The notes: generated from the letters alone by a model not told the origin. A stretch of 64,000 nt of DNA from IMGVR_UViG_3300020188_000808:203784-267783; one strand, 5' to 3'; positions 3,004 to 58,028 are shown, counted from the stretch's first letter. Made by a program: numbers and translations.

Positions 3004-3543
3004 TTATTCAGCTTGTGTACGATGAATTGTTAAATTACCTGCTATTACTATTCGCTCTTTGTCGTTCTTCTGTGGGGGTACTTCGTGTGTTACCCAACCT
3101 GGGAATACTGCTATAAGTCCGGGATTTGGAAATATAGCATTACCACTTGTTGGAAATACTAAAGGTGCATCATCTGGAGTTGCATCAACATAGTATACAA
3201 AACTCCAAATAGCAGGATGATGTGCATGTGGTTTACAGCTATCGCCTTTGGAATATACTGCACCCCAACAATCTGTTACTTCATACTTACCACCAACTAA
3301 ATGTTCAAGACCATTTTGTACAACATCAATAGCAAAGTTAATAATCTTTTTAAAGTCAGGATCTCTAAACATTGTCCATTCTGTCATATTTGCTTGAACA
3401 TTTGTTTTTCTAAATTGGCAATCCCCTCTAGCTCTAATTTTTTCAGCTAGTATTGGATTGAGTGTCTCGGCATCTTCATATACGTGAGTATAGATGTCAG
3501 CAGATTCTTTAAACTCTAATTTTTGCACGTTTGGTATGAACAT
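3004..3543 (-). CDS. Putative 2OG-Fe(II) oxygenase
   Basis: HAH...FPGWVTHEV...ERIVIAGN DSBH signature. Confidence 0.8.
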   Translation of the reverse strand: MFIPNVQKLEFKESADIYTHVYEDAETLNPILAEKIRARGDCQFRKTNVQANMTEWTMFRDPDFKKIINFAIDVVQNGLEHLVGGKYEVTDCWGAVYSKGDSCKPHAHHPAIWSFVYYVDATPDDAPLVFPTSGNAIFPNPGLIAVFPGWVTHEVPPQKNDKERIVIAGNLTIHRTQAE

Positions 3544-3548
3544 GCAAT

Positions 3549-3556
3549 TATTTATA
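3549..3556 (-). promoter_or_regulatory. T4-type late promoter TATAAATA
   Basis: Exact T4 late consensus, 5 nt before the ATG at 3543. Confidence 0.7.
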
Positions 3557-3576
3557 TAGGGGTGTTTAATGTATTG

Positions 3577-4461
3577 TTATTGCTGGTTCTGTCCAGCTTC
3601 AGCTTGTTTCATAAGTGCTTTGAACTTACCAAACAGTTGAGGATTAGACATCATACTTTGAATAGCAGTTGCATATGGAGCAATCGCTTTAATAATATTT
3701 GGCGGTAATGTTTCACCTGATGATATTTTATCTAAGCCTTTTGCAACTTGGGCACCACTTGCTTTACCACCAACAACACCTTTTAATGCTGTTGCTTTTT
3801 GTGCAACCTGTTGTGTTTGTTTGTTATCGTCGCCTTTTGCTAAGCCAGTAACTTTGCCAATTACGCCGCCTTGTTCTGCACCAGCTCTTTTGATATCATC
3901 TCTACTAGCACCTGTGGCATTCGCCGCAAAATCTACTGCCTTGTCTGCTACTTTACCTGCAACTTTTTTAACAATGCCTGCACCTGGTGCTTCTTTTACA
4001 AATTTGTTTTTAGCTTTATTAAATCCCTTCCATCCTGTTTCGGGCTTTAATTTAACTGCACCGTCACTCCAATCTGATCCAGTCCATGTCCAAGTTACAG
4101 TACCATCGTTGTATGCACTACCTGGTTTTAAATCATCTATTGTTTTAGGTTGTTTTTGAGTTTGTGCTTTAGGATCTGGTGTCGGTGTTGGTGTTGGTTT
4201 TGCTTTAGTCTTTGTGTCTTTTTTAGAAGTGTCGCCTTTAGCAATCCAATCATCAGTTTCTTTATCGTCAATGCCACCGCCGGGTGCGATTGGTTCTTTA
4301 CTGCCGTGTGCGCCACCAAACTTTTTTGAAAATGCTTTATTTAGATTACTAAGACCTGTACCTAAACGATTGTTGCGAACTAAATCATCTACTTTACCAA
4401 GCGATGCTTTAGTGTTTAACCAACCTCCTGGAGGTGCTTCTACAAGATCTTCAACTTTCAT
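3577..4461 (-). CDS. Lys/Gly/Ala-rich putative capsid-internal protein
   Basis: N-terminus MKVEDLVE|APPGG, internal FVKE|APGAG, PT linker. Confidence 0.55.
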   Translation of the reverse strand: MKVEDLVEAPPGGWLNTKASLGKVDDLVRNNRLGTGLSNLNKAFSKKFGGAHGSKEPIAPGGGIDDKETDDWIAKGDTSKKDTKTKAKPTPTPTPDPKAQTQKQPKTIDDLKPGSAYNDGTVTWTWTGSDWSDGAVKLKPETGWKGFNKAKNKFVKEAPGAGIVKKVAGKVADKAVDFAANATGASRDDIKRAGAEQGGVIGKVTGLAKGDDNKQTQQVAQKATALKGVVGGKASGAQVAKGLDKISSGETLPPNIIKAIAPYATAIQSMMSNPQLFGKFKALMKQAEAGQNQQ

Positions 4462-4464
4462 TGA

Positions 4465-5127
4465 CTAAGCCTTTACGCAATTATCAACGGTCTTGCCGCC
4501 TTTTTTCTTAGTACCCATACGCTTGTAGCCTTTCCAGCATACTTTGCCGTCAACGCCTTTTTGTTTTTCTTCGTCAAGTGTAGTGTAACTAGGCTTGCCA
4601 CAATCTTTACATTTACTATTTGCTACTTTTTCGTTTAGCATATTAGCTAATGTGTTTTTGTATGATTCGTTTTTCTTTTTGTCTGCTTTAGAAGCGTGTA
4701 CTGCTTTACGCTGTGCATCGTTCTTGTACTTGCCTTCATTCTTTTGATTTTCTTTGTAGCAATCGCAATGTTCGCAATCAGGTCCGCATTTACATTCTGT
4801 TACAGGCTTTCCGCAACATGCTTCTGGACACATTTTTTCTTTAGCTTCGTTAGCTGTAGATTCTGCTACTTCGTCAAACTTCATTTGGTAGTCTAAGTGA
4901 TGGTAAACACTACCTAAATAATCTGCTGATTTAGTAATTTTAGCTTGTACCCAACCTTCTAAGCCTGCTGACTCGTCAACACCTTTAAGCATTTCGTGTA
5001 GTTTGATACTGTATTTTGCAATTTTGTATAGTTCAGCTCTAGCCATTTGTACTTCATGGTCTGACTCAGCTTTGTAAGCCATGTCTGCTAAACCTTCTTT
5101 TAGTTGTTTTTTATTCATATCCATCAC
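4465..5127 (-). CDS. Modular putative capsid-internal protein with Cys-rich and CWKGY modules
   Basis: Modules: LEGWVQAKITKSADYL; CPEACCGKPVTECKCGPDCEHCDC; EGKYKNDAQRKAVHA; CWKGYKRMGTKKKGGKTVDNCV. Confidence 0.6.
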   Translation of the reverse strand: MMDMNKKQLKEGLADMAYKAESDHEVQMARAELYKIAKYSIKLHEMLKGVDESAGLEGWVQAKITKSADYLGSVYHHLDYQMKFDEVAESTANEAKEKMCPEACCGKPVTECKCGPDCEHCDCYKENQKNEGKYKNDAQRKAVHASKADKKKNESYKNTLANMLNEKVANSKCKDCGKPSYTTLDEEKQKGVDGKVCWKGYKRMGTKKKGGKTVDNCVKA

Positions 5128-5143
5128 TTTATCTCTCTAATAG

Positions 5144-5151
5144 TATTTATC
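5144..5151 (-). promoter_or_regulatory. Late promoter GATAAATA
   Basis: Overlaps the TAA stop of the upstream gene. Confidence 0.65.
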
Positions 5152-5377
5152 GTTTAGCTACTTTGCCACCAAAGAAACTGTCTGACGCATCTAGTGCATT
5201 AACCACTGTGCCGTCTGCTTTTTTCTTAGACTTCTTTTTAGGTACACCGTTCTTATCACGTGGTATTTGACCATGTGCATGTACTGGATTTGCCACAGTT
5301 GCTATAGCACCTGCACTAGTACCGCCTGCTGTTGCAGTTTCTTCTAGGTCTTTTTGAAATAGTTCACGTATTAACAT
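5147..5377 (-). CDS. Small basic putative capsid-internal protein
   Basis: MLIRELFQKDLEE|TATAGGTSAGAIA, Lys-rich tail. Confidence 0.55.
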   Translation of the reverse strand: MLIRELFQKDLEETATAGGTSAGAIATVANPVHAHGQIPRDKNGVPKKKSKKKADGTVVNALDASDSFFGGKVAKR

Positions 5378-5382
5378 AGTAT

Positions 5383-5390
5383 TATTTATC
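5383..5390 (-). promoter_or_regulatory. Late promoter GATAAATA
   Basis: 5 nt before the ATG at 5377; overlaps the upstream stop. Confidence 0.7.
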
Positions 5391-6276
5391 CTGATTTAGC
5401 CATCTTAGTTGCTGTTGCATACATAACTGCTTCAGCATCTTTGCCATAACGCTTTTTAAAGTCACTTTTATTCTTTTTCATACCCTTTACTATGCGTTCT
5501 TTTTCTGCTTCTTCGTCTTTATCTAGTTCACGTTCTTCTACAGGTTTATTAAAGTAATCCTTTAATAGTCCAGCAGTACGCTCGAACTTGTGATCTTTGT
5601 GCTTAAATCCAACTCCACCTTTAGCTTCCCAGTTTCTAATATTAGATCCAAAGTCGTCAATTAGTATGTTAGGTGTACCATCAGGTTGTTTAGCCCACTT
5701 GTATTTGTCTGCGGATATAATAACTTCTTTAGGTGGAAAAAACGCTAAGTTCTTTTTAATCCATTCACGCTTGTGTGGTTCTGCTTTAGGGTCGTTAGCT
5801 AACGGAGCACTTAATATGTTGTACTCTCCTTTTAGCTCTTTAATAATGTTTAATAAGTTTTGAGCATTTTTTGTTAATGGTAATGATAACCAAAAATCAT
5901 CTTTGTCTCTAATTGTTTGTAATGCACTTTCAATGTCTGTAATTTGTCGCCAATCTTTACCTACTATCTTCTTCCAAGCTGGAAAGAAATCAGCTAATAC
6001 TCCGTCCATGTCTACGTATATTTCACTAACTGCTGATAGTTCTTTTGATTTTAATTCTTTTATTTGCGACTCAGTCATCCCCATATTAAATAAAGTATTT
6101 GGTTTTGTATTTTTATGTGCTTTCTTATGCATAGTATACAACGGCTTTCCATCTTTGTCAACCGAATTACCAAATTTCTTTGCTTCAATACTAGTTTGAT
6201 CCACGCCAACATCAGGAGTTGTGTTAACACCTTTTACAATGCGTCCTACGCCTTCTGATATCTCATGCCATCTCAT
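5386..6276 (-). CDS. 5'(3')-deoxyribonucleotidase-like HAD domain flanked by small modules
   Basis: YVDMDGVLADF...ILSAP...KREW...LIDD. N-terminal ISE|GVGRIVKG and C-terminal VEE|RELDK..FKKRYGKDAEAVMYATATK modules. Confidence 0.8.
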   Translation of the reverse strand: MRWHEISEGVGRIVKGVNTTPDVGVDQTSIEAKKFGNSVDKDGKPLYTMHKKAHKNTKPNTLFNMGMTESQIKELKSKELSAVSEIYVDMDGVLADFFPAWKKIVGKDWRQITDIESALQTIRDKDDFWLSLPLTKNAQNLLNIIKELKGEYNILSAPLANDPKAEPHKREWIKKNLAFFPPKEVIISADKYKWAKQPDGTPNILIDDFGSNIRNWEAKGGVGFKHKDHKFERTAGLLKDYFNKPVEERELDKDEEAEKERIVKGMKKNKSDFKKRYGKDAEAVMYATATKMAKSG

Positions 6277-6500
6277 TTCTTTTTACGTCCTCTAAACCCT
6301 TGTGGCATATTTTGGTTAGTCATATAAGGTCTACTAAACCAAAGTTTAAACCAATCTTGATCACCTGGTTTTACACCCATTGCTTTTTCTTTTTTCTTTA
6401 GAGCTGTTGCAGTAATACTAGGATTTTCGTCAATCTTATACTCCGAATAACCTGAGAATTCATTAATCCCTGCTAGTCGTTGTAAAGTTTTAATATCCAT
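6273..6500 (-). CDS. Small hypothetical protein
   Basis: 75 aa, LQRLAGINE...VKPGDQDWFKLWF, tightly packed between its neighbours. Confidence 0.65.
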   Translation of the reverse strand: MDIKTLQRLAGINEFSGYSEYKIDENPSITATALKKKEKAMGVKPGDQDWFKLWFSRPYMTNQNMPQGFRGRKKK

Positions 6501-9370: not shown

Positions 9371-9378
9371 CTTATCTC

Positions 9379-9717
9379 CTAGTGGTTTAATAGCACACTA
9401 TTTACTGTACCTGCTGTATGTACTGCTAACACTCTTACCCAAACAAAATTGCCTGTAAAGTTTTTAAAGTAATTACCGTCACTACCTGTTTCGCTTGTAT
9501 TAGTTATATCAAACCAATCATCAGCTGTAGGAGTTACTGCTAGAGTTCCTTGCATTTTAATAGTTCCGTTAAAGCCACTAAGGTTGTATTGCACAGTATG
9601 GAACCCATCTGCACGACCGTAATAGCCGTCTCCTTTAAACTTCTCACCTGTAATAGTCTGTGTTGTACTATCTCCTAGGTGTGTGTTTTGTGTTAATATT
9701 GTTGTACTGTTGGACAT
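9379..9717 (-). CDS. Small beta-rich putative virion protein
   Basis: GDGYYG..DG.HTV...FTGNFVWVR, late promoter upstream. Confidence 0.6.
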   Translation of the reverse strand: MSNSTTILTQNTHLGDSTTQTITGEKFKGDGYYGRADGFHTVQYNLSGFNGTIKMQGTLAVTPTADDWFDITNTSETGSDGNYFKNFTGNFVWVRVLAVHTAGTVNSVLLNH

Positions 9718-9721
9718 ATAG

Positions 9722-10378
9722 TTATTTATCTAGATCTTTACTACTTATAATTTTATCAATTCTCATCAAATCCTTCTTTAAGAACAATCTAATTAAGGTT
9801 ATAGTGGCAAAATCTTTAACATACATGTACATACCTTTGAGATTATATCCGCGTTGTATGTTACTTAATACTCTATTACCTATCTTAATTTTACTTTTAT
9901 GTTTGATGCAGAAGTTCGCAAGGTTCGGATCAGCAGTTCCGTTAAGTGTAATTTTATAACCAAAGTCTATAGTATCATTAATAATAATATTAGGGGTTAA
10001 GATTGCATTATCTTTGGGCATGTGTACTACGCAAACTGCGTTTAGTTTACTAGTTATAGTTTTAACCCATTCATAGTTATTAGTGTATATTCCTAAGTGA
10101 TAACTTTCACAACGAATTTTAAAATTTTCTTTTTGTTTTATGAATAACGAAAGTAATATCTGTAGATCGGATAGTTCTTCAGAAGTAACATTTACTGTTC
10201 TAAATCCAGACCCCCATTTAACAAAACCTTCAGCTTCGTATTGTTGAATAGCAGTATCGATAGACTTTCTTGCATGAGAAAAGTTTTTATTTCTAAAAAC
10301 AAAGCCTAATGCATTATGAAAGTCTACCTTATACTTGTATTGATCGTAGAATAGTTTATGAGAATCAACTTTTATCAA
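9722..10378 (-). CDS. Hypothetical protein
   Basis: 218 aa ORF overlapping the clpA stop; start codon uncertain. Confidence 0.6.
   Translation of the reverse strand: MIKVDSHKLFYDQYKYKVDFHNALGFVFRNKNFSHARKSIDTAIQQYEAEGFVKWGSGFRTVNVTSEELSDLQILLSLFIKQKENFKIRCESYHLGIYTNNYEWVKTITSKLNAVCVVHMPKDNAILTPNIIINDTIDFGYKITLNGTADPNLANFCIKHKSKIKIGNRVLSNIQRGYNLKGMYMYVKDFATITLIRLFLKKDLMRIDKIISSKDLDK
9723..9730 (-). promoter_or_regulatory. Late promoter GATAAATA
   Basis: 5 nt before the ATG at 9717. Confidence 0.7.
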
Positions 10379-13159: not shown

Positions 13160-13988
13160 CTTGTATCTTTCTTATTTTTTCTCTTAATAGTTCGTCGTTA
13201 ATTTTTGGTGTAACACCATTTACTTTAATATATAAGTTGCCTGTTTGTCCTTGTCGTCTATTTGGTAATCCCTGTCCACCAACACTAAAAACTGTTCCTG
13301 GGTTTGACCCTGCTGGTACATTAACACTTAATGTACGTCCGTGTATTGTTTGGATGGTTATGTTTGTGCCTAAAATGAAATCAAATAAATTTAACTTCTT
13401 GTCTATATATAAATTTATGCCATCTTGAGTGTACTCGGGGTGCTTTCTGACTCTTATAAGAACATGCAAATCACCTCTTGGTGCTTGGCTATGTGCATCA
13501 CTGCCCATGCCTGCATACCGTATTCTATCACCTGCTTGTACACCTGGTGGTAATTTAATTTCTACTGTTTCTTCTCTACCACTAGGCAATCTGTAAGTTG
13601 CAATAACTTCTTTACCGGTAACAATATCTTCTAAATCAATATCAGCACCAATAGTTATATCTTGGTTCCTCATATGTCTACGCATATTTGGGTTTGCTCC
13701 AAACATTTGTCCAAATATATCTTCAAAATTAGCACCACCAAAAGCATTTGAAAAATGACTCTGCTGTTGTGCTTGTGCTTGTTGAGGATCAGCAGTTCCA
13801 TACTGATCATACATCTGTCTTTTTTGTGGATCTTTTAGTGCAGAGTATGCTTCGTTAATTTGTTTGAACTTTTCATCACTTCCACCATTCCGATCAGGGT
13901 GGTGTTGCATACTTTGTTTCTTGTATGCTTTCTTCAGCTCTGAGTCTGTGGCGTTTCTTGGAACACCTAAAAGTTCGTAATAATCCAT
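13140..13988 (-). CDS. dnaJ: DnaJ-family co-chaperone lacking the Zn finger (CbpA-like)
   Basis: J domain with HPD, G/F linker (FEDIF), C-terminal GDL domain; no CxxCxGxG repeats. Confidence 0.9.
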   Translation of the reverse strand: MDYYELLGVPRNATDSELKKAYKKQSMQHHPDRNGGSDEKFKQINEAYSALKDPQKRQMYDQYGTADPQQAQAQQQSHFSNAFGGANFEDIFGQMFGANPNMRRHMRNQDITIGADIDLEDIVTGKEVIATYRLPSGREETVEIKLPPGVQAGDRIRYAGMGSDAHSQAPRGDLHVLIRVRKHPEYTQDGINLYIDKKLNLFDFILGTNITIQTIHGRTLSVNVPAGSNPGTVFSVGGQGLPNRRQGQTGNLYIKVNGVTPKINDELLREKIRKIQDETKTT

Positions 13989-13994
13989 AATAGT

Positions 13995-14023
13995 ATTATA
14001 TACTTATCTTAGGCTTTTGTCAA
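13995..14023 (-). promoter_or_regulatory. sigma70-type promoter of dnaJ-def-clpA
   Basis: TTGACA-17-TATAAT, 6 nt before the ATG. Confidence 0.85.
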
Positions 14024-14026
14024 GTT

Positions 14027-14368
14027 CTATTTGTCTGGATTCTTTTTAGATGTACCAGCATATAGTCCAAACCATGCCGCTCCTGCACCTACAACAATAC
14101 TAACTAATCCTGATTGCTCTAAGTTTGGATTTGGTAAATTCATGAACCATGTTGTAACATCATATAATAAGTAAATGTAAACTGACAAAAAGATTCTTGG
14201 AAAAATTCTCCAAGCATCTACAGCTCTTGCGAGAAAGATAAGATGCATATACGGATTCTTACCACTGTCAACTACATTAGTATCTACTTCTAATTCTAGT
14301 TTAACTTTTTTTGTATCTGTAGTTTCTACCTTTGTATCAGTTTCTACTTTTTTAGTTTCATTTTCCAT
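14027..14368 (-). CDS. 2-TM membrane protein, holin candidate
   Basis: Charged N-terminus, WRIFPR followed by two TM segments; lies in the lysis region. Confidence 0.5.
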   Translation of the reverse strand: MENETKKVETDTKVETTDTKKVKLELEVDTNVVDSGKNPYMHLIFLARAVDAWRIFPRIFLSVYIYLLYDVTTWFMNLPNPNLEQSGLVSIVVGAGAAWFGLYAGTSKKNPDK

Positions 14369-14792
14369 TTTTAATTTTCTCTATATTTTCTTTATTATCT
14401 TTAATTGCATCAGTTTGTGCTTTATCAATCATCTCTTGAAGACGTCTTCCTTTATCAATATCTGAATCTAAATGTAGATTTTTATTAATAACTTTTTCTA
14501 ACCTGTGAAACTTAACACGGTCATTTGGAATATATCTCCAAGTATAACCACGCTTACCGTAAACACCAAACACACTTTCACGCAATCCTATTTTAACTAT
14601 AATAGCATCATCGTCATCTAATATAATAGCATCACCCTCATTAAACGCAGGATTCATTTTAAACTTTAATCCTGACATTAGATTAGCCGCAAAATCTTTA
14701 AACCAGAAAGCAACAGAAATACTAATTAGTATTGCTATCCAAGGTGCTAACAAATCTGTTAAGCTCATTCCTAATTGATCAAATGCGTCCAT
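14358..14792 (-). CDS. Minimal MscS-like membrane protein
   Basis: TM helix then KDFAANLMSG...FNEGD.I.LD...IVKIGLR, matching MscS TM3 and beta domain. Probable ATG at 14792 with a GGAG SD. Confidence 0.6.
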   Translation of the reverse strand: MDAFDQLGMSLTDLLAPWIAILISISVAFWFKDFAANLMSGLKFKMNPAFNEGDAIILDDDDAIIVKIGLRESVFGVYGKRGYTWRYIPNDRVKFHRLEKVINKNLHLDSDIDKGRRLQEMIDKAQTDAIKDNKENIEKIKNGK

Positions 14793-14807
14793 CTTCGTCT
14801 CCACTAG

Positions 14808-14815
14808 TATTTATC
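14808..14815 (-). promoter_or_regulatory. Late promoter GATAAATA
   Basis: Part of a 13-bp repeat shared with 16972-16984. Confidence 0.7.
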
Positions 14816-14824
14816 AGTCAAAAG

Positions 14825-24492: not shown

Positions 24493-25096
24493 AGTTAACT
24501 TGCTCCTTTTTAAATATAGGTAATATAATATTGCGTTGTCTTGCAAACGGAGTACTCTTACCACTAAACACGTATCCAGCAGTAACACGAGGACTTACAT
24601 CTTTAACAGGTATGCCTCTATGTAAGTAACGACTTGGAAAGACGATTAGACGTCCTTCTTTGTATTCCACTTCATCAATTTTTTTACCATCTTTCTCAGG
24701 ATCGCCATCCCAAAAATCCATACCAGTGTCACCGTGAATTAAATAAACCATAGTGTAAGCAGGTACATCATCTCCACTATCGACATGCAATCCACCTGTG
24801 TGTTCTTTTGTTGTAAGATTAATTTGTACTTGATTTAATTGTATGTCGCCAACATCATTGTCAATTAGATTCTTATGATGTTCAAAGGCGTGCCATACTG
24901 CTTTTAGTGTCCACGGAGTATTTTCTAACTCTGCTTGTGAAAACTGTTGACTAAAGATTTGATGTCCTTGATACTGACCTAAACCTCTATGTCCAAAACT
25001 AAGTGGATAATGTAATACTTGATTTATAGCTTGGTCATGTAACCATTGTGGAACTACATCATCAAGTATTACTATTTTATTGGGATCATAATTCAT
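24470..25096 (-). CDS. 2OG-Fe(II) oxygenase
   Basis: HVD...GRLIVFPSRYLHRG...PRVT. Confidence 0.8.
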   Translation of the reverse strand: MNYDPNKIVILDDVVPQWLHDQAINQVLHYPLSFGHRGLGQYQGHQIFSQQFSQAELENTPWTLKAVWHAFEHHKNLIDNDVGDIQLNQVQINLTTKEHTGGLHVDSGDDVPAYTMVYLIHGDTGMDFWDGDPEKDGKKIDEVEYKEGRLIVFPSRYLHRGIPVKDVSPRVTAGYVFSGKSTPFARQRNIILPIFKKEQVNYDSRNNI

Positions 25097-25102
25097 AGTT
25101 TA

Positions 25103-25131
25103 ATTATAAACTATGTTTGTTAGAATGTCAA
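25103..25131 (-). promoter_or_regulatory. sigma70-type promoter
   Basis: TTGACA-17-TATAAT, 6 nt before the ATG at 25096. Confidence 0.85.
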
Positions 25132-26501: not shown

Positions 26502-27023
26502 TTATCTCAGGAACTCACGCCAATCCAGGCCAAACTGGATTGAATTTACCTTGTGTACACCTATCAAATATAGCACATATGATGCTACGCTTGATCCACG
26601 TCCTACACCCCATACAATGTCGTTCTCACGCATAAAGTTCACAAGATATATCATATACTGTAGCAAAGGCTTCATACCTCTGCCTTCAAACTCTGCAAGT
26701 TCTTCTGCACATCTTGCTGTTTCTTCTTGTGTAGTACATTTCTCCAGCACCCAATTATGTACATTAATGGCTTTGTATGCGTCAGGCATGAACCATTCAC
26801 TTTGACATACACCGTCAAAAGTCTTTTGATCTACATCTAATGGGATATACTTTTGTAGTTTGCTAAGGCCTTGTTCTTCCATAGCACTATTGAACTTGTC
26901 TACGTCATCACTTGGATCACATAGTACAACGTGTACCTTATCCGCATGACCACTATAGATCATATCAATAAGATCTTTATTAGAAAATCGTGGAATACCT
27001 AAATCGTCAGTTTTCATAAGCAT
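26502..27023 (-). CDS. Stand-alone fragment of DNA polymerase III alpha (DnaE palm region)
   Basis: WGVGRGSSVASYVLYLIGVHKVNSIQFGLDWREFLR matches DnaE GxGRGS...LGIT.VDP....L.FERFL. Confidence 0.85.
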   Translation of the reverse strand: MLMKTDDLGIPRFSNKDLIDMIYSGHADKVHVVLCDPSDDVDKFNSAMEEQGLSKLQKYIPLDVDQKTFDGVCQSEWFMPDAYKAINVHNWVLEKCTTQEETARCAEELAEFEGRGMKPLLQYMIYLVNFMRENDIVWGVGRGSSVASYVLYLIGVHKVNSIQFGLDWREFLR

Positions 27024-27029
27024 ACACTT

Positions 27030-27058
27030 ATTTTAACTTACATTGATTAGATTGTCAA
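27030..27058 (-). promoter_or_regulatory. sigma70-type promoter
   Basis: TTGACA-17-TAAAAT, 6 nt before the ATG at 27023. Confidence 0.75.
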
Positions 27059-51264: not shown

Positions 51265-51714
51265 CTATCCTTCATAGATCGCTGAGTTTGCTCCGTGTTC
51301 GGCACATTCTACCTTTACACAATAACAACGACCGTCTGTTGCTTCACGAATCAGTTTGTCAGCAAAGTAAAATGCGTGTTCTGCAAACTTCTCTGCACCT
51401 ACACCGCCAAACTCTCTTACTTCACACAAGCCTTTGTCTTGTAGATCATAAAAGTCTTGTTTGTGCGGATCGTTAAAGTCTACACAAGTCTTATGATCAA
51501 AACTATCTTCTAACCAAGCCTTCAAAGGCTTTAGTCCGCCAAAGTCGACTGCCCAGTTTTTATTGTCTAGATGATCACATCCAAATGTAAATGTAAATGC
51601 TAGACTGTAACCGTGTAGCAAATGGCAATGTGAATGATCTGCGTTAGGTTGTCTAAAGACTGCCGAAAGACCAATGTTGTGTCCGTAATGTTTTGTACTA
51701 TAATGTTTTCCCAT
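51265..51714 (-). CDS. queD: 6-carboxytetrahydropterin / 6-pyruvoyltetrahydropterin synthase
   Basis: CHLLHGYS, VDFG.LK, FDHK, E.GANSA.Y. Confidence 0.88.
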   Translation of the reverse strand: MGKHYSTKHYGHNIGLSAVFRQPNADHSHCHLLHGYSLAFTFTFGCDHLDNKNWAVDFGGLKPLKAWLEDSFDHKTCVDFNDPHKQDFYDLQDKGLCEVREFGGVGAEKFAEHAFYFADKLIREATDGRCYCVKVECAEHGANSAIYEG

Positions 51715-51793
51715 AATATTCTCCTACTATAATGTTTTTTTTATGGGCGGCAGAGTTAGAAGGGTTGACGCCAAGTCCTTTATTCATGTATAT

Positions 51794-51822
51794 ATTATAT
51801 ATGAGTTTTGTTTACTTGTCAA
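51794..51822 (-). promoter_or_regulatory. sigma70-type promoter of queD
   Basis: TTGACA-17-TATAAT. Confidence 0.85.
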
Positions 51823-52423: not shown

Positions 52424-53042
52424 TCCTATAATCTCTTATTTTTGCATACGCGGCTCTGTCACTGTGTCGAATAGTATTAAAACTAACTGTGTATCGTTTT
52501 TCTGTTGTGTTTGACGGCACATGATGTCGCATCCAGCTTGGAAATAAACATAGCAATCCTGTTTTAGGATAACATTCTAATTCATATCTATTGTAGTCTG
52601 TTAGTCCTAGTGCTGAATAGTTCATAAAGTTTACTTGATTAGGGTTTTCAAAAACCAAAGGCGCACTACCTCCATCTACATAAGGATAGTATGCTCCGCT
52701 GACAATACTTCTTTCATGTCGATGTGCATCTACTTGTCCGTTCTGATATAACGAGTTAAACCAACTAGTTGATATTAGAGTGTAATCAACACCAAGATGT
52801 TGTGTATAAATGTCAACACATTCTTGTATAGTTTTCCAAAGGTTAGTTAGTCTTTTATCATTAAGGAACTGTTCATCTCCTGTGATGTAACTACTCTGTC
52901 CTTCGTGTACTAGTTTATGGTCACCAAATTTTGTATACGTGTTAATCATTTCCATTACAGTATTTTCATCAGGATGTCCTTCGATGTCAAATGTTGTAAC
53001 TAAACTTGGAAACGCATTATGGTGTGCAGGCTCTAACTTCAT
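52395..53042 (-). CDS. 2OG-Fe(II) oxygenase, paralogue of the adjacent gene
   Basis: HRH..SIVSGAYYP...FPSWMRH...KRYTVSFN. Confidence 0.85.
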   Translation of the reverse strand: MKLEPAHHNAFPSLVTTFDIEGHPDENTVMEMINTYTKFGDHKLVHEGQSSYITGDEQFLNDKRLTNLWKTIQECVDIYTQHLGVDYTLISTSWFNSLYQNGQVDAHRHERSIVSGAYYPYVDGGSAPLVFENPNQVNFMNYSALGLTDYNRYELECYPKTGLLCLFPSWMRHHVPSNTTEKRYTVSFNTIRHSDRAAYAKIRDYRIDPHESTDS

Positions 53043-53593
53043 TTAAGTTCCTCTAAATCTAAATTCTTTATGTTACTATACTTATCTGGCCATTTTTTTG
53101 TAGAGTAATAATTGAATGTAATATCAGGAAAGTGTTCAAATACTTTGTTTATTTGGTATATCCAATAACTTGGGTCAACTGGTCTAGCAGTTGATTTGCT
53201 GTAGTTTTTAGTATCCTTGTAAATATTTCCATGGTACAAATCAAACCCTACTAGGTTAACTGGTTCTCTCCATTCATATGCTAATCTTGCTCCAATTAGC
53301 ACAGCAAAAGGACCACTGCCCCAATGCCAAGGATCATCTGGTCTTGCTGTACCTCTGTAAGGTAAGTCAGGTAAACACTCAACTCCTTTGAAATCTTTAA
53401 ACCAGTCTTTACGAGTATATAAACTGCCCTTAAATGTGTTTGCTTCTAGTACTTCTTTAACCATTCGCTTGTCGCAACAGACTAGATGATCTACTGTATA
53501 ATCTCTATACAGGGCATTACATCCTACTTTAGTATCTCTAATCAGATCTAAATCAATGTTATATCTAGTTTCACCGTTGCCAATTACAAGCAT
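53039..53593 (-). CDS. CstII/Maf-like (GT42/DUF115-fold) putative CMP-sugar transferase
   Basis: Start MLVIGNGETR at 53593; GCNALY, SG..A...A, LVGFDLY parallel CstII IAGNGPS / RCNQFY / TSG / LSGIDFY. Confidence 0.55.
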   Translation of the reverse strand: MLVIGNGETRYNIDLDLIRDTKVGCNALYRDYTVDHLVCCDKRMVKEVLEANTFKGSLYTRKDWFKDFKGVECLPDLPYRGTARPDDPWHWGSGPFAVLIGARLAYEWREPVNLVGFDLYHGNIYKDTKNYSKSTARPVDPSYWIYQINKVFEHFPDITFNYYSTKKWPDKYSNIKNLDLEELK

Positions 53594-53598
53594 AACAT

Positions 53599-53611
53599 TA
53601 TTTAATAAATA
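53599..53611. promoter_or_regulatory. Overlapping divergent late promoters
   Basis: ATTAAATA on minus (53599-53606) and AATAAATA on plus (53604-53611). Confidence 0.6.
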
Positions 53612-53638: not shown

Positions 53639-56020
53639 ATGACTGCATACTACGATTTTTTCAGATACGTTAAACTATATTCCCCTGACGGAACAACATT
53701 AGAAGCTACTGTAGAAGCTGATAGTGTTACAGATAGTATTAATTTTGTTAGAGGAAACGGTGTTGCTTGGAACACAGTTGATGTCGGTACAGACACGTTT
53801 AAATTTGATGTCGATTACAGTCTTAGTATTCCATTAGCAAGTACAGATATAACACTTACTGACGTTAATAATGCAACCTCAACAATCAGTTTAGTTGCAG
53901 GTGGTAATATGATTATTACTAGAGATAATGCAAATCAATTAACTATTGCGGCATTGGTTGGCGGTGTTAGTAAATCAATTCAAAACATTACAACAACTAA
54001 CCCAGTTGTAATTACAACAACAAATGCACACGCATTCACTGATGGTACAGAAGTAACTATTGTTGATGTTGTTGGAACTACACAGCTTAACGGTAACGAA
54101 TACTTCATGGACGTACAAACTAGTGACACGTTTGCTTTGTACACAGATGCACAATTAACAACACCATTAGACGGCACAGCATTTACAGCATATGTCAGTG
54201 GCGGAGTTGCTACTGCTGATTACGGTGGAGCAAAGAACGCATTTAAAACTATTCAGGTAACAGGTCAAAGTCCTGTTGTTGCTGACAACATTCAAGATAT
54301 TTTAAACCTAACAGGTGGAACAGGTATTGACATTACAACAACACCTGGAACAGACTCTATTGCATGGGCGATAGACAATACAGTAACAACACTTGCAGAT
54401 GCACAAACTTTACTAAACAAAACTTTAACATCTCCAATCATTGCGGCAATTAAACCAAGTGCAAGTAATTCATGGTCATTGCCTGATAGTAACGATACAT
54501 TTGTAGGTAAAGCTACAACAGACACGTTTACTAACAAGAGTGTTGACTTAACAAATAATACACTAACGACAACTATAGCACAATTGAATACAGCCGTTAG
54601 TGACGAAACAGTAGTAGCTAGAGATACAACAGACACACTTACAAACAAGTCAATTAGTTTAACTGATAATACAGTAACAGGTACAATAGCAGAACTTAAT
54701 ACCGCAGTTAGTGATGAAACTGTAGTAGGTAGAGATACAACTGATACACTTACAAATAAAAGTATTGATCTAACTGATAATACTGTAACAGGAACCTTTG
54801 CGGAATTTAATACTGCGGTTAGTGACGAAACACTTGTTGGACTTGATGCATCACAAACATTAACAGCTAAAACGCTAACTGATCCTATTCTATCTCCTAC
54901 TGCTACAACAGCAGGTAAGATTGAGTTTTTAGAAGGAACAGACAACGGTACTAACAAAGCAACACTAATAGGTCCTGCAAGTACTGCTGATGTAACTATT
55001 ACATTGCCAGCCGCAACAGATACACTAGTTGGTAAAGCAACAACAGATACATTTACAAATAAAAGCGGTAGTAATAGTCAGTGGACAAATGATGAAGCAT
55101 ATATTAAAGCTGACACAAGTGACACACTTACAAACAAGTCAATTAGTTTAACAACTAATACTGTAACAGGTACACTTGTAGAATTTAATACTGCGGTTAG
55201 TGATGCTACTCTTGTTTCAACAACAGGTATAGAAACCCTTACTAACAAAACTTTAACATCTCCGACCTTTAGTGGAACAGCAACATCATTCACTTCAACA
55301 GGTATTGATGACAATGCAACAAGCACATCTATCACTATAGATTCATCACAGAGTGTAGGTATTGGCGGAGCACCAGTAGCTCTTAGTGGAAATGCTACCC
55401 CAGGATTAACACTTACTTCAAATGGTCCTTTTATACTTTTAAAAGATGCAAACAACGCAAATAAAACAACATACATTTCTAATAATAGTGGGGTACTTCA
55501 ATTTGGTATAGTTGATGATGATGGCGTAACAAATAAAACTGAACATATGCAGATTACTGATACAGGTACAGTACAAGTAGCGTCAGCCGCAAATTTTGAA
55601 ACTCCTAATATTACAGGATCCATTCCAGGCATGACATTTGTTATGACTATTGGGGGAATTACAACGATAGGTGATGGTGCAACAACTGTTACAAGATATG
55701 CTACTCCAGGAAATGATTGGCAAGCAAATTTAGCCATAGGTACTAGCATGCCAGTTACTAGCAATATGAAATGTGTTGCAATGTCTGTTCTTTGTGATGG
55801 TGTGCTAACTGTTGGTTCTTCAAATGTAACACTTATGAAAAACGGTGTTGATACAACAACATCTGTTACCTTTGCTAATGGAGATGGCGGAACTGGTGAT
55901 GTAAAACAAAGCACAGTAAATAATAGCTTTGACGCTGGTGACAGAGTAGGAATCAAAGTAGTCACACTATCAGCAACTGCTAGAGCATACCTTGTTATGA
56001 CTCAGTGGGAATTAATTTAA
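53639..56020 (+). CDS. Thr-rich accessory tail fibre/virion protein
   Basis: FCCH-like domain (ITTTNPVVITTTNAH...GTTQLNG), TLTNK repeats, TLPAATDTLV; lone plus-strand structural gene. Confidence 0.75.
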   Translation: MTAYYDFFRYVKLYSPDGTTLEATVEADSVTDSINFVRGNGVAWNTVDVGTDTFKFDVDYSLSIPLASTDITLTDVNNATSTISLVAGGNMIITRDNANQLTIAALVGGVSKSIQNITTTNPVVITTTNAHAFTDGTEVTIVDVVGTTQLNGNEYFMDVQTSDTFALYTDAQLTTPLDGTAFTAYVSGGVATADYGGAKNAFKTIQVTGQSPVVADNIQDILNLTGGTGIDITTTPGTDSIAWAIDNTVTTLADAQTLLNKTLTSPIIAAIKPSASNSWSLPDSNDTFVGKATTDTFTNKSVDLTNNTLTTTIAQLNTAVSDETVVARDTTDTLTNKSISLTDNTVTGTIAELNTAVSDETVVGRDTTDTLTNKSIDLTDNTVTGTFAEFNTAVSDETLVGLDASQTLTAKTLTDPILSPTATTAGKIEFLEGTDNGTNKATLIGPASTADVTITLPAATDTLVGKATTDTFTNKSGSNSQWTNDEAYIKADTSDTLTNKSISLTTNTVTGTLVEFNTAVSDATLVSTTGIETLTNKTLTSPTFSGTATSFTSTGIDDNATSTSITIDSSQSVGIGGAPVALSGNATPGLTLTSNGPFILLKDANNANKTTYISNNSGVLQFGIVDDDGVTNKTEHMQITDTGTVQVASAANFETPNITGSIPGMTFVMTIGGITTIGDGATTVTRYATPGNDWQANLAIGTSMPVTSNMKCVAMSVLCDGVLTVGSSNVTLMKNGVDTTTSVTFANGDGGTGDVKQSTVNNSFDAGDRVGIKVVTLSATARAYLVMTQWELI
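54515..55225 (+). repeat. 37-aa (111-bp) repeats in the fibre gene
   Basis: TxDTxTNKSxxLTxNTxTxTxxxxNTAVSD units at 54515, 54626 and 54737, plus a fourth at 55115. Confidence 0.85.
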
Positions 56021-56496
56021 TTTTTAGGATTAACGATTAATAAAATATTATCGTATGTTTGTGATTTTTCAGTTTGGAAGATTAGATAGTTGCATACAAA
56101 GTTACCTGTCATGCTAACACGGTATTCTCCACCCGCCATCATATCGTTTGGAACAGCCATTGTCCATTGATTAGGAATAGGTTCTCCAGGGCGTGTGTTA
56201 CGAGTGTATTGTTTTGTAAACTTGTCTAATCTATGCGTATGTCCATCTTTATGATATGCTACACCATACACTTCTGTACTATTACATTCATGCTTTTTAG
56301 AGCCTATCATCATAAACTCTATATCGTCGTGCTGTTCAATTGGGTTGTTTACTATTTCAATTTTAACATCTTGGAATACAAAAGCGTTATTAAAACTCAT
56401 ATATGCAATACCTAGCACAATGATAGTCATTAAACTTAGTCCACTGACTACATTTGCTATTGCACGTAATAGGATGAATTTTTGATTACTTGTCAT
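56017..56496 (-). CDS. Single-TM protein with a two-Cys soluble domain
   Basis: Probable start MTSNQKF at 56496; N-terminal TM; KHEC...FVCN. Confidence 0.6.
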   Translation of the reverse strand: MTSNQKFILLRAIANVVSGLSLMTIIVLGIAYMSFNNAFVFQDVKIEIVNNPIEQHDDIEFMMIGSKKHECNSTEVYGVAYHKDGHTHRLDKFTKQYTRNTRPGEPIPNQWTMAVPNDMMAGGEYRVSMTGNFVCNYLIFQTEKSQTYDNILLIVNPKN

Positions 56497-56821
56497 TTCT
56501 AACTTTTCTAAGTTCTTTTTTAATTCTACTAAATTCAACGTGAACTTCATATAAATTATTACTTGCCCTCTGTAAGGTATTTATTAATGATTTGATTGTA
56601 AACAGAGTCCAAAACCACCAAGTTACGGCTGTCACAGCAAATGATCCTACTCCCCACCAAAATGCTTGGGCAAAGGTTATAGTATTAAAAAGAAGCAATA
56701 CTCCAGTAATCGTTAGAAATGCTGTTGGGATTACTTTCGCATAGATATCCCACAGTTCTACCTGTTTTTTAATCTTTTCTTCTATTCTCTTTTGTTGTTC
56801 TAGTTCTTGTTTTTTCATCAA
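56486..56821 (-). CDS. 2-TM membrane protein with coiled-coil tail
   Basis: Two TM helices; ATTAAATA promoter at 56851-56858. Confidence 0.65.
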   Translation of the reverse strand: MMKKQELEQQKRIEEKIKKQVELWDIYAKVIPTAFLTITGVLLLFNTITFAQAFWWGVGSFAVTAVTWWFWTLFTIKSLINTLQRASNNLYEVHVEFSRIKKELRKVRNDK

Positions 56822-56887
56822 TAGTTGCCTTTACTGTGTTCTCTACAGTATATTTAATCTAGTTAGGTGATAAATTAAAGCAGACTA

Positions 56888-58015
56888 TTAAGAACTAATA
56901 GTGCCAAATGGCTTCCATTCGCCTGGCGTTCCTTCTCTAATACATACCCACCCTACATATCCTGTTGGAGTTGGCTCTGTATTAAAAATTAGATCTCCTC
57001 TAGTGTAAATTCCGTTAGTTGGAAGTTGATCACTAAATTCAATTTTCTTACCTTGCACTTTAATTGGTGATGCAACACTTAATGCTGTATCAGGATTATT
57101 AATTCCAATACCTACATTACCTTTGAAAGTTGTAACAGTATTAGAATCAGTACCAACTTCAATTTTGTTGGTAGATTTAAGTTTAATTCTTGTAACATCG
57201 TCAGTTACTAGCTCTAAGTCGTGTGTAGTATATGATCCAGTTTTAATACTATCAAACCCAGGCTCAACGATATATTCTGCTTCATTGCTGGCTACACTTA
57301 GTTGTCCGTTTGGAGCATCTATACCTATTCCTAATCTCATTCCATCTCCGTCATAGAAGATAAACTGATCAATATTCATATTGCCTTCGGTTCTTAAATT
57401 TCTAAGTGTACCTACGCTAGTTAGATTAGAATGTGTTATGCCTGCGCCAAGTGTGTCTGAACTTAGTACTGAAACATTGCCAATCATATAATGCTTTGCA
57501 TCATGTAAGTCCAACGACTCACTACTCCATAGTCTTTCGGAGTTGGCTTGCATTACTAGTTGTTTGGTATGACCGTACCCGGTCCACATTAGACCTTTTC
57601 CAAATGGGGTATCTTGTTCACTACATTTAAATTCTAATGGACTTGTTCTTTCAAGTCTAACGTCAGCATTAATTTCTACTGCATCAATACGTTGAGCAGT
57701 GATGATTCCGCCAACCTGTAAATTCTTTTCAACTTTAATATCCCCTTTGAGTTCAACAGCATCAATGTAGTCTACAACAATTCTATCATCTTTAACAAGT
57801 AAACTTACTTTAGATGCTTGGTCGTATATACCAACACTTTTAAATGCTGAGATAGTACCTCCGTGTACTAAGTCACCTGTAATTGAATCGTTGGGCATAC
57901 CCTCTACTGTTGGAACTGATTGCTCTCGTTGTGAGATAGTTTCAATTGCATTAGCGAGTTGTGTCAACCCATTTTTAATTACTAAAAGGTCATTATCTGG
58001 AATATTACTGTTCAT
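56888..58015 (-). CDS. Putative virion fibre/spike protein
   Basis: SNLTSVGTL, GNVGIG..NP, C-terminal GD.IFN.EP...GYVGWVC...GTPG.WKPFG. Confidence 0.7.
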   Translation of the reverse strand: MNSNIPDNDLLVIKNGLTQLANAIETISQREQSVPTVEGMPNDSITGDLVHGGTISAFKSVGIYDQASKVSLLVKDDRIVVDYIDAVELKGDIKVEKNLQVGGIITAQRIDAVEINADVRLERTSPLEFKCSEQDTPFGKGLMWTGYGHTKQLVMQANSERLWSSESLDLHDAKHYMIGNVSVLSSDTLGAGITHSNLTSVGTLRNLRTEGNMNIDQFIFYDGDGMRLGIGIDAPNGQLSVASNEAEYIVEPGFDSIKTGSYTTHDLELVTDDVTRIKLKSTNKIEVGTDSNTVTTFKGNVGIGINNPDTALSVASPIKVQGKKIEFSDQLPTNGIYTRGDLIFNTEPTPTGYVGWVCIREGTPGEWKPFGTISS

Positions 58016-58020
58016 ACTAT

Positions 58021-58028
58021 TATTTATC
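58021..58028 (-). promoter_or_regulatory. Late promoter GATAAATA
   Basis: 5 nt before the ATG at 58015. Confidence 0.7.

What the first reader, a model, noticed from the sequence alone, without database searches (positions are those of the whole stretch)
3541..58028. Start codons sit at a fixed distance from both promoter classes, implying systematic leaderless mRNAs
Seen: five late promoters have exactly 5 nt between TAAATA and ATG (genes starting 3543, 5377, 9717, 53593, 58015). Three sigma70 promoters have exactly 6 nt between the -10 box and ATG (13988 dnaJ, 25096, 27023), and a fourth such ATG opens the queD leader (51787). None leaves room for an SD, whereas other genes have clear AGGAG leaders. 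Known: transcription starts about 6-7 nt after a -10 element, and leaderless mRNAs are initiated by intact 70S ribosomes without anti-SD pairing. Inference: the phage runs a leaderless regulon in both early and late programmes. This may reflect a host rich in leaderless mRNAs (e.g. an alphaproteobacterium) or give resistance to translation shut-off that targets SD-dependent initiation.
Basis: partly seen in the sequence, partly recalled or inferred. Interest (0 to 1): 0.7.

Follow-up and report, generated by a model that had tools for sequence, protein, structure and literature searches.

The report
Leaderless genes in a jumbo phage
In this uncultured aquatic jumbo phage about a quarter of the recognisable promoters sit so close to a gene's ATG that the mRNA should begin with the start codon itself; relatives keep this arrangement, but no RNA 5' ends have been mapped.

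Summary
All nine cited sites exist on the minus strand. In the 267.8-kb parent contig, TAAATA lies exactly 5 nt before the first ATG of 14 long ORFs, against about 0.4 per neighbouring distance. Strong TTGACA-N17-TATAAT promoters show a second peak at 5-7 nt (7 genes), nothing at 9-22 nt, then SD-bearing leaders. A complete 357.6-kb relative repeats both patterns. Orthologue sets keep motif and spacing while the spacer letters change: TerL 55/59, window gene 9717 52/56, window gene 27023 45/50. DnaJ orthologues swap promoter class but keep the leaderless distance.

The phage encodes a gp55-type late sigma factor. Late-type sites precede TerL, baseplate and virion genes. Sigma70-type sites precede DnaJ, primase and a PolIII-alpha fragment. 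Both spacings put +1 on the A of ATG, so leaderless mRNAs are the best explanation. No transcription start is mapped: the public RNA libraries were uninformative.

- The phage is a PA5oct-related jumbo phage.
- Only about 20-35% of promoter-proximal genes are affected.
- The queD site (51787) opens an unconserved 29-codon ORF.
- The host and shut-off ideas are untested.
- T4, PA5oct, S-RIM2 and three other cultured relatives lack the pattern.

The parts
3541..3556 (-). Late-type leaderless unit: TATAAATA (3549-3556), spacer ATTGC (3544-3548), ATG (3541-3543). It starts gene 3004-3543 (179 aa, 2OG-Fe(II) oxygenase).
   Evidence: Sequence. No in-frame start upstream. Family. The orthologue in G001 is ambiguous because of paralogues.
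5375..5390 (-). Late-type leaderless unit: GATAAATA, ATACT, ATG. It starts gene 5147-5377 (76 aa, no family). The TAA of the motif is the stop codon of upstream gene 5386-6276.
   Evidence: Not conserved in G001, where an SD-less, non-promoter upstream is found. This is the weakest of the five late sites.
9715..9730 (-). Late-type leaderless unit: GATAAATA, ACTAT, ATG. It starts gene 9379-9717 (112 aa, virion-structural-like).
   Evidence: Of 56 distinct orthologue upstreams (55-100% aa identity), 52 keep TAAATA at N5 (50) or N4 (2).
53591..53606 (-). Late-type leaderless unit: ATTAAATA, ATGTT, ATG. It starts gene 53039-53593 (184 aa). It lies back to back with a plus-strand TAAATA (53606-53611) that has a 27-nt SD leader for virion gene 53639-56020.
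   Evidence: The G001 orthologue aligns from residue 1 and has TAAATA-N5-ATG.
58013..58028 (-). Late-type leaderless unit: GATAAATA, ATAGT, ATG. It starts gene 56888-58015 (375 aa, tail-fibre-like C-terminus).
   Evidence: All 3 distinct orthologue upstreams and G001 keep TAAATA-N5-ATG.
13986..14023 (-). Sigma70-type leaderless unit: TTGACA (14018-14023), 17 nt, TATAAT (13995-14000), ACTATT, ATG (13986-13988). It starts dnaJ, 13140-13988.
   Evidence: The J domain starts at residue 2 (Pfam profile positions 1-63), so this ATG is the true N-terminus. Orthologues carry either sigma70-N6/7 (11) or TAA[AG]TA-N5 (25) out of 42.
25094..25131 (-). Sigma70-type leaderless unit: consensus TTGACA-N17-TATAAT, TAAACT, ATG. 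It starts gene 24470-25096 (208 aa, 2OG-Fe(II)-oxygenase/endonuclease-V-like PHROG).
   Evidence: Only 1 open codon upstream and no alternative start. No orthologue in G001.
27021..27058 (-). Sigma70-type leaderless unit: TTGACA-N17-TAAAAT, AAGTGT, ATG. It starts gene 26502-27023 (173 aa, DNA pol III alpha-like fragment). The promoter lies in the last codons of upstream gene 27033-27257, and its stop codon TAA opens the -10 box.
   Evidence: Of 50 distinct orthologue upstreams, 45 keep it. TTGACA stays invariant at synonymous sites of the upstream gene.
51698..51822 (-). Consensus sigma70 promoter (-35 at 51817-51822, -10 at 51794-51799) whose predicted +1 is an ATG (51787). That ATG opens a 29-codon ORF overlapping the SD-led queD start (51714). 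It is probably a normal 73-nt leader.
   Evidence: no Rfam family; not conserved in G001.
14790..14813 (-). Contrast example of a leadered late unit: TAAATA (14808-14813), CTAGT, then GGAG at the predicted +1, then ATG at 14792. The leader is 10 nt and begins with the SD.
   Evidence: The shortest late leaders begin with the SD core 5-8 nt after the motif. Distances 6-14 are almost empty.

Best explanation
These are transcription units whose promoter is placed so that RNA polymerase starts on, or within a base or two of, the A of the ATG. The mRNA then has no 5' untranslated region and no SD.

Mechanism:
- Early in infection, host RNA polymerase with its primary sigma factor would use the TTGACA-N17-TATAAT promoters. 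The start site is the 7th base after the -10 box.
- Late in infection, polymerase carrying the phage's gp55-type sigma factor would use (G)(A)TAAATA. The start site is the 6th base after the motif.
- Ribosomes would initiate directly on the 5'-terminal AUG, the known 70S/initiator-tRNA route. This step rests on established knowledge and is not tested here.

The phage builds its leaders in two forms only. Either there is no leader, or there is a leader of at least about 10 nt that begins with the SD.

Shown here: motif identity, exact spacing, statistics, conservation, true N-termini, presence of the late sigma factor, and the match between functional class and promoter class.

Inferred: the position of the start sites, the activity and timing of the promoters, and the mode of translation.

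Leaderless genes include TerL, primase, DnaJ, a PolIII-alpha fragment, a baseplate wedge protein and minor virion proteins. The major capsid protein uses a strong SD. Leaderless starts may therefore mark proteins needed at modest levels, but this is speculation.
For: 1. Sharp single-base peaks at the two canonical distances in G000 and in the independent genome G001, with flat controls.
2. An empty zone follows (late 6-14 nt, sigma70 8/9-22 nt), where a leader would be too short for an SD. After it come SD-bearing leaders whose SD core starts 5-8 nt after TAAATA, that is, at the predicted +1.
3. Leaderless and leadered late sites share the same extended motif, G-A-TAAATA-(C/A)TAGT.
4. Conservation with a variable spacer: TerL 55/59, window 9717 52/56, window 27023 45/50, window 58015 3/3. 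Most G000/G001 orthologue pairs also keep the arrangement.
5. At TerL the promoter follows directly after a terminator hairpin and T-run, and the hairpin keeps its pairing through compensatory changes. Transcripts entering TerL must therefore mostly start at this promoter.
6. DnaJ orthologues exchange a sigma70 promoter for a TAAGTA/TAAATA motif, each at its own leaderless distance.
7. The ATGs are true starts. There is no upstream in-frame start, the DnaJ J domain begins at residue 2, and orthologue alignments begin at residue 1.
8. A gp55-type sigma factor lies at G000 114594-115454. Late-type sites precede structural and packaging genes, and sigma70-type sites precede replication and chaperone genes.
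9. Only ATG, never GTG or TTG, occurs at these positions.
10. T4 late promoter numbering, with the first T at -13, comes from PMC2988020.
Against: - No RNA 5' end has been observed. The only RNA data are Logan contigs of salt-marsh metatranscriptomes. They run across the promoters with flat depth that mirrors the DNA libraries.
- Only 2 of 14 late leaderless sites in G000 have a terminator just upstream. The others lie in the 3' end of the preceding gene, so those genes are also present on read-through transcripts.
- The start-site offset of this gp55 homologue (286 aa against 185 aa in T4) is assumed from T4.
- G001 also uses a 4-nt spacing (8 sites), so the start site or spacing has some play.
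- Two window sites are not conserved or not testable in G001: 5377 and 25096.
- Gene starts come from my own ORF-based caller, not from a curated annotation.
Confidence: 0.75

Rival explanations
1. The motifs are real promoters, but they sit at gene boundaries only because the genome is tightly packed. They serve the genes further downstream. The adjacent gene would be translated mainly from longer read-through transcripts, by termination-reinitiation or SD-independent internal initiation, and not from a leaderless mRNA.
For: - The contig is 94% coding.
- 12 of 14 late leaderless sites lie inside the 3' end of the upstream ORF. At 5377, 9717 and 27023 the upstream stop codon overlaps the motif.
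Against: - Packing alone predicts a spread of distances over 0-14 nt. It does not predict a single-base peak with an empty zone beside it.
- TerL and G000 93736 have a terminator directly upstream.
- The DnaJ intergenic space is filled entirely by a consensus promoter.
- The spacing is kept across promoter-class swaps.
Confidence: 0.13
2. TAAATA-N5-ATG is a translation-initiation context acting on internal start codons, for example an A/U-rich site for ribosomal protein S1, and is not a promoter.
For: - The motif is A/T-rich and sits where enhancers of SD-less initiation act.
- The host may be a marine bacterium with weak SD use. Prochlorococcus is said not to rely on SD (PMC5607370).
Against: - The same extended motif occurs 15-35 nt upstream of SD-led late genes.
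- A canonical sigma70 promoter shows the same behaviour at its own distance.
- The genome encodes a gp55-type sigma factor, whose family recognises TATAAATA.
- The phage uses SD in about 57% of genes.
Confidence: 0.05
3. Chance co-occurrence in an A/T-rich genome, or an artefact of my start-codon calls.
For: - GC content is 36%, so TAAATA is common (257 sites).
- 4 of the 9 TAAATA-N5-ATG matches in the window open no gene.
- The 51787 case is compatible with chance.
Against: - Poisson P is about 5e-18 and 2e-9.
- The reversed-pattern control gives 22 vs 6 in G000 and 21 vs 4 in G001.
- The histogram needs no gene calls.
- The arrangement is conserved in dozens of distinct relatives.
Confidence: 0.01

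Closest known systems
Thermus phages phiYS40 and Lalka27a (mostly leaderless transcripts)
   Same: [quoted passage not shown] This is stated in bioRxiv 10.64898/2026.04.20.719267, which cites Sevostyanova 2007.
   Different: In those phages most transcripts are leaderless, A or G of the initiator codon can be +1, and the host phylum is itself rich in leaderless genes (PMC12340547). Here only about 20-35% of promoter-proximal genes are leaderless, only ATG is used, the rest use strong SD, and the late promoter is T4-type. Their 5' ends are mapped; these are not.
T4 late transcription (gp55 sigma factor, TATAAATA at -13..-6)
   Same: A gp55-family sigma factor is present. A TATAAATA-like motif lies upstream of structural and packaging genes. 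There is no conserved -35 element.
   Different: In T4 itself no TAAATA-N5-ATG opens a long ORF: 10 matches against 5 controls, and 0 first-ATG ORFs of at least 60 codons. The sigma factor here is 286 aa against 185 aa. T4 gp45 found no match. gp33 was not sought.
Pseudomonas phage PA5oct (closest cultured relative, TerL 53%)
   Same: Jumbo myovirus lineage. TTGAC/TATAATA promoters are reported from RNA-Seq (PMC7318152). GATAAATA motifs lie upstream of structural genes.
   Different: There is no enrichment of TAAATA-N5-ATG (15 against 12 controls). Only one gene start has it, the structural protein gp262. Its late leaders carry SD. Leaderless mRNAs are not mentioned in that paper.
Bacterial leaderless genes inferred from a -10-like signal about 12 bp upstream of the start codon (Zheng 2011, PMC3160421; Deinococcus-Thermus, PMC12340547)
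   Same: The in-silico signature and logic are the same. A TANNNT box at a fixed short distance from the start codon implies a missing 5' UTR.
   Different: Those are cellular genomes using the primary sigma factor only. Here a phage uses the signature with two sigma classes, and the trait is specific to one viral clade.
Lambda cI mRNA from PRM (classic single leaderless phage mRNA; from my own knowledge, with Shean and Gottesman 1992 listed in the references of PMC12340547)
   Same: A sigma70 promoter whose +1 is the A of the AUG.
   Different: That is a single regulatory gene of a temperate phage. It is not a set of about 20 genes in two temporal classes.

Membership tests
Leaderless mRNA genes (5'-terminal AUG) | The primary transcript 5' end coincides with the start codon, or lies within a few nt of it. 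| tested here: inconclusive
   Only Logan contigs of metatranscriptomes were available. They bridge the promoters and have flat, DNA-like depth. No raw-read RNA run was offered.
Leaderless mRNA genes (5'-terminal AUG) | The promoter -10 element lies at the canonical distance from the start codon, and there is no SD. | tested here: met
   6 nt after TATAAT and 5 nt after TAAATA. These are genome-wide peaks. The spacer leaves no room for an SD.
Leaderless mRNA genes (5'-terminal AUG) | The adjacent ATG is the real translation start, and the codon is AUG. | tested here: met
   No upstream in-frame start. The DnaJ J domain begins at residue 2. Orthologue alignments begin at residue 1. There are 0 GTG/TTG cases. 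No proteomic proof.
T4-type late transcription system | A gp55-family late sigma factor is encoded. | tested here: met
   T4 gp55 hits G000 114747-114965, E = 4e-6. The 286-aa ORF matches phrog_12791 'sigma factor for late transcription', E = 2.5e-74.
T4-type late transcription system | A TATAAATA-like -10 motif without a -35 element lies upstream of late (virion and packaging) genes. | tested here: met
   G-A-TAAATA logo with no upstream conservation. It lies upstream of TerL, baseplate, virion and tail-fibre-like genes.
T4-type late transcription system | A sliding-clamp activator (gp45) and a co-activator (gp33). | tested here: inconclusive
   T4 gp45 as query found nothing in the 75%-complete contig. 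A distant homologue could be missed. gp33 was not sought.
Thermus-phage-like 'mostly leaderless' strategy | Most transcripts of the phage are leaderless. | tested here: not met
   14 leaderless against 42 leadered late units in G000, and 23 against 42 in G001. 7 of about 27-37 sigma70 units are leaderless. About 57% of genes carry an SD.
T4-like cyanomyovirus (suggested by the first megablast) | Core genes are closest to cyanomyoviruses, and photosynthesis genes such as psbA are present. | tested here: not met
   Only 925 bp match S-RIM2. TerL is closest to PA5oct at 53%. No psbA in G000-G004.

The most novel reading that the evidence does not exclude
This abundant uncultured jumbo-phage clade has evolved a deliberate two-channel translation programme. 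A conserved subset of early and late genes (TerL, primase, DnaJ, polymerase fragment, baseplate) is expressed from 5'-AUG mRNAs that bypass SD/anti-SD pairing. Bulk structural genes use strong SD. This would let the phage retune host ribosomes, for example through the phage-encoded ribosomal protein bS21 seen in the complete relative G001. It could also let the phage survive SD-directed shut-off or cleavage without losing these functions.
Probability: 0.12. Interest if true: 0.75.

Novelty: new member of a known kind. Interest (0 to 1): 0.45.

Why it matters
- Leaderless phage mRNAs are known: lambda cI and the Thermus phages. A conserved, clade-wide set driven by both a sigma70-type and a T4 gp55-type promoter has not, as far as I could find, been described. 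T4, PA5oct, a cyanomyovirus and three other cultured relatives lack it.
- If true, it gives single-base predictions of start sites and promoters for an uncultured but widespread aquatic jumbo-phage group.
- It explains why SD-based gene callers will misplace or miss these starts.
- It offers a natural system of matched leaderless and SD-led late genes, with orthologues that switch state, for asking what leaderless translation is for.
- The 'zero or at least 10 nt' leader rule is also a compact design principle that can be tested with reporters.

Tried and rejected
- RNA evidence. Metatranscriptome runs X2, X5, X11 and X18 were laid on the TerL region, and X2 and X11 with DNA runs X1 and X3 on window 9000-14900. 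Contigs cross the promoters and depth is flat and DNA-like, so nothing can be said about start sites.
- Riboswitch or other RNA in the queD leader: no Rfam match, even at E = 10. In the whole window only a tRNA was found.
- Host identification. No psbA in five related contigs. The ClpB-like ATPase finds only MAG contigs of unrelated phyla, probably mis-binned phage. The host remains unknown.
- Phage-encoded IF3: none found.
- T4 gp45 homologue: none found.
- Literature. 'Leaderless' with 'cyanophage' or 'Prochlorococcus' gave only reference-list or host-side mentions. The PA5oct paper does not mention leaderless mRNAs. phiKZ and AR9 have none. Doron 2016, Miller 2003 and Sevostyanova 2007 are not held.
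- The first impression of a T4-like cyanophage was rejected after the TerL search.
- Two sigma70 promoter subclasses, AAC-TTGACA for leaderless units against TGG-TTGACA for leadered units, were considered. This was dropped because G001 does not follow it.

Full report
**What the window is.** The window is bases 203,784-267,783 of a 267,783-bp IMG/VR viral contig (G000). The contig is estimated 75% complete and has 36.4% GC. A first megablast hit cyanomyoviruses, but only over 925 bp. The large terminase is closest to Pseudomonas jumbo phage PA5oct (53% identity), then to Sinorhizobium phage Phosso and the Rak2-like giants (44-50%). IMG/VR holds at least 599 stretches encoding a TerL relative, and the 80 loci kept are 78-100% identical. 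They include a complete 357,559-bp genome, G001. My own ORF-based gene calls give 280 genes and 94% coding density, with nearly all window genes on the minus strand.

**Checking the observation.** Read on the minus strand, all nine sites are as described.
- TAAATA + 5 nt + ATG lies at 3543, 5377, 9717, 53593 and 58015.
- TTGACA-N17-TATAAT (TAAAAT at 27023) + 6 nt + ATG lies at 13988, 25096, 27023 and 51787.
- For most of these sites no in-frame start codon exists upstream.

**Is it more than chance?** I built a histogram that needs no gene calls.
- Over all 257 TAAATA sites of G000, an ATG that is the first in-frame ATG of an ORF of at least 60 codons lies at distance 5 in 14 cases. It lies at each of distances 0-14 otherwise in 0-1 cases. 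A hump follows at 15-35 nt. Poisson P is about 5e-18.
- Control hexamers show nothing. The reversed-pattern control gives 22 vs 6.
- For sigma70-like promoters with at most one mismatch, the distance to the first long-ORF ATG is 5-7 nt in 7 cases, never 9-22 nt, and 23-47 nt in about 20 cases. P is about 2e-9.
- G001 repeats both patterns. For TAAATA, distance 5 has 15 cases and distance 4 has 8. For sigma70-like promoters, distance 5-7 has 9 cases and distance 8-19 has none.
- Four further related contigs show 6-8 TAAATA-N5-ATG matches against 1-4 for the reversed control.

**Are the motifs promoters of the two classes?**
- G000 encodes a gp55-family late sigma factor (T4 gp55 E = 4e-6; phrog_12791 E = 2.5e-74). 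It sits beside gp46/47-like SbcCD genes, as in T4.
- TAAATA-N5 genes include TerL, three virion-structural-like proteins, a gp25-like baseplate wedge protein and a tail-fibre-like protein. They also include some auxiliary enzymes: a 2OG-Fe(II) oxygenase and a heptose kinase/adenylyltransferase-like protein.
- Sigma70-N6 genes are DnaJ, a primase, a PolIII-alpha fragment, a 2OG-oxygenase-like protein and a 434-aa unknown.
- Leaderless and leadered TAAATA sites share one extended logo, G-A-TAAATA-(C/A)TAGT. Of the 42 leadered sites, 32 have an SD core in the leader.
- In T4 the first T of TATAAATA is at -13 (PMC2988020), so 5 nt separate the motif from +1. For a sigma70 -10 hexamer (-12..-7) the gap is 6 nt. 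Both observed spacings therefore put +1 on the A of the ATG.

**An internal check on the start site.** In the leadered late units the SD core begins 5-8 nt after TAAATA, for example TAAATA-CTAGT-GGAG at window 14793-14813. It almost never begins earlier. Distances 6-14 to the ATG are nearly empty. Leaders are thus either absent or at least about 10 nt long and open with the SD. This is what one expects if transcription starts at the sixth base after the motif.

**Comparative evidence.**
- TerL. 55 of 59 distinct upstream sequences (78-100% aa identity) have TAA[AG]TA at 4-5 nt from the ATG. The spacer letters vary. The promoter is preceded by a hairpin plus T-run whose stem changes by compensatory substitutions. 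So a terminator abuts the promoter, which abuts the ATG.
- Window gene 9379-9717: 52 of 56.
- Window gene 56888-58015: 3 of 3.
- Window gene 26502-27023: 45 of 50 keep TTGACA-N17-TA(A/T)A(A/C)T-N6-ATG. This promoter lies in the last codons of the upstream gene. TTGACA is invariant even at synonymous positions, although A/T-ending codons would be expected.
- DnaJ. 11 orthologue upstreams have the sigma70 promoter at N6/7, and 25 have TAAGTA or TAAATA at N5. The five sequences that one search reports as TAAATA-N9 are overlapping TAAGTA-N5 sites and are counted in the 25. The promoter class is exchanged but +1 stays on the A.
- Between G000 and G001 (40-80% aa identity) most orthologous pairs keep the arrangement.

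**True starts.** The Pfam J domain aligns from profile position 1 at DnaJ residue 2. Many G000/G001 alignments start at residue 1. No GTG or TTG occurs at these positions.

**What does not fit, or is weaker.**
- The ATG at 51787 opens a 29-codon ORF that runs over the SD-led queD start. No RNA family matches. In G001 queD has a TAAATA promoter with a 38-nt SD leader. I treat this site as a normal leadered promoter.
- Site 5377 is not conserved in G001, and 25096 has no orthologue there.
- Only 2 of 14 late leaderless sites in G000 have a terminator upstream. The others are embedded in the end of the preceding gene, so read-through transcripts also carry these genes.
- About 57% of genes have an SD. 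The major capsid and scaffold-like genes use strong AAGGAG.
- The leaderless share is about 25% (G000) to 35% (G001) of late-promoter-proximal genes, and 16-26% of sigma70-promoter-proximal genes.

**RNA data.** Six salt-marsh metatranscriptome runs hold the phage, but only as assembled contigs. Laid on the TerL region and on window 9000-14900, their contigs cross the promoters. Their depth is flat and parallels the DNA libraries. This suggests DNA carry-over and gives no information on 5' ends.

**Distribution.** The pattern is absent from:
- T4: 10 matches vs 5 controls, none opening a long ORF;
- PA5oct: 15 vs 12, with one gene, gp262;
- cyanomyovirus S-RIM2: 1 vs 3;
- Sinorhizobium phage Phosso: 3 vs 2;
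- Serratia phage BF: 5 vs 13;
- Vibrio phage 2.275.O: 3 vs 3.

TerL of Serratia BF and of the Vibrio phage has an SD. The trait is therefore specific to the uncultured clade around G000 and G001.

**Known precedents.**
- Thermus phages YS40 and Lalka27a have mostly leaderless transcripts with mapped ends (bioRxiv 10.64898/2026.04.20.719267).
- A -10-like box about 12 bp before the start codon is the accepted in-silico mark of leaderless genes (PMC3160421; PMC12340547).
- phiKZ and AR9 have no leaderless transcripts.
- The PA5oct transcriptome paper reports TTGAC/TATAATA promoters but says nothing on leaderless mRNAs.

**Verdict.** The interpretation, leaderless units in both temporal classes, is the best-supported reading (about 0.75) but rests on inference about the start sites. 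It is a further phage lineage with a known kind of arrangement. It is notable for three things: its use of a T4-type late promoter, its 'zero or at least 10 nt' leader rule, and its conservation through promoter-class swaps. The host and shut-off ideas remain untested.

Noticed in passing
window 34750-35674 (inside gene 34745-37195, minus strand): 925 bp are 89% identical in nucleotides to part of a 1713-aa protein gene of Synechococcus cyanomyovirus S-RIM2. That gene lies between baseplate-wedge genes. This looks like a recently exchanged tail-fibre or receptor-binding module, and it is the only hint to the host. No psbA was found in five related contigs.
   Followed up: partly
L200 (G001:C1:332212-332364, minus strand): The complete relative G001 encodes a ribosomal protein bS21 homologue (Pfam PF01165, 69 bits). 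None was found in the 75%-complete G000. A link to SD-independent translation is only speculation.
   Followed up: no
window 53599-53611: Two late promoters lie back to back. The minus-strand TAAATA (53599-53604) is leaderless for gene 53039-53593. The plus-strand TAAATA (53606-53611) has a 27-nt SD leader for virion gene 53639-56020.
   Followed up: partly
L016-L095 (TerL loci), upstream of the TerL start; G000 39683-39730: A terminator hairpin directly upstream of the TerL late promoter keeps its pairing through many compensatory changes across relatives. The T-run ends 2-4 nt before the promoter motif.
   Followed up: partly
L115-L172 (DnaJ loci); window 13989-14023: DnaJ orthologues carry either a consensus sigma70 promoter or a TAAGTA/TAAATA motif. 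The same gene would then be early in some lineages and late-type in others. TAAGTA also replaces TAAATA at TerL in some lineages.
   Followed up: partly
window 10365-13988: A ClpB/ClpA-like AAA+ ATPase (755 aa, phrog_4871) and a full-length DnaJ lie close together. The phage carries its own chaperone set. Several 2OG-Fe(II) oxygenase paralogues (3004-3543, 24470-25096) and queD (51265-51714) are also present.
   Followed up: no
window 26502-27023: A free-standing 173-aa ORF matches only a short N-terminal stretch of the DNA polymerase III alpha Pfam domain (PF07733, profile positions 16-94 of 260). It may be a split or fragmentary polymerase gene. It is conserved in at least 50 distinct relatives.
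   Followed up: no
G000 495-6747 (plus strand, outside the window); G001 11.6-23.3 kb: There are arrays of small genes, each with a stereotyped TGG-TTGACA-N16/17-TATA(A/C/G/T)T promoter and a conserved 'ataaacaataagg..gagggca' SD leader. They look like an immediate-early host-takeover cluster.
   Followed up: no
window 60815-60891 (minus strand): tRNA-Arg (anticodon GCG), the only Rfam or ARAGORN hit in the window.
   Followed up: no
L366 and neighbours (genome-contig hits for window 10365-12632): The closest 'bacterial' homologues of the ClpB-like gene (52-69% identity) lie in MAGs of unrelated phyla: Neomarinimicrobiota (a 335-kb contig), Polynucleobacter, Crocinitomicaceae and Pacearchaeota. 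These are probably phage contigs binned into MAGs.
   Followed up: no
window 14399-14429: In all four runs laid (two DNA, two RNA) a contig leaves the window sequence at 14429, and a 'goes back 502' joint is reported at the end of the stretch. This may be a strain variant or a short repeat.
   Followed up: no
G000 97211-99494 (outside the window): The T4 gp23-like major capsid gene and the gene upstream of it use strong AAGGAG SD sites and no adjacent promoter. TerL, by contrast, is leaderless.
   Followed up: partly
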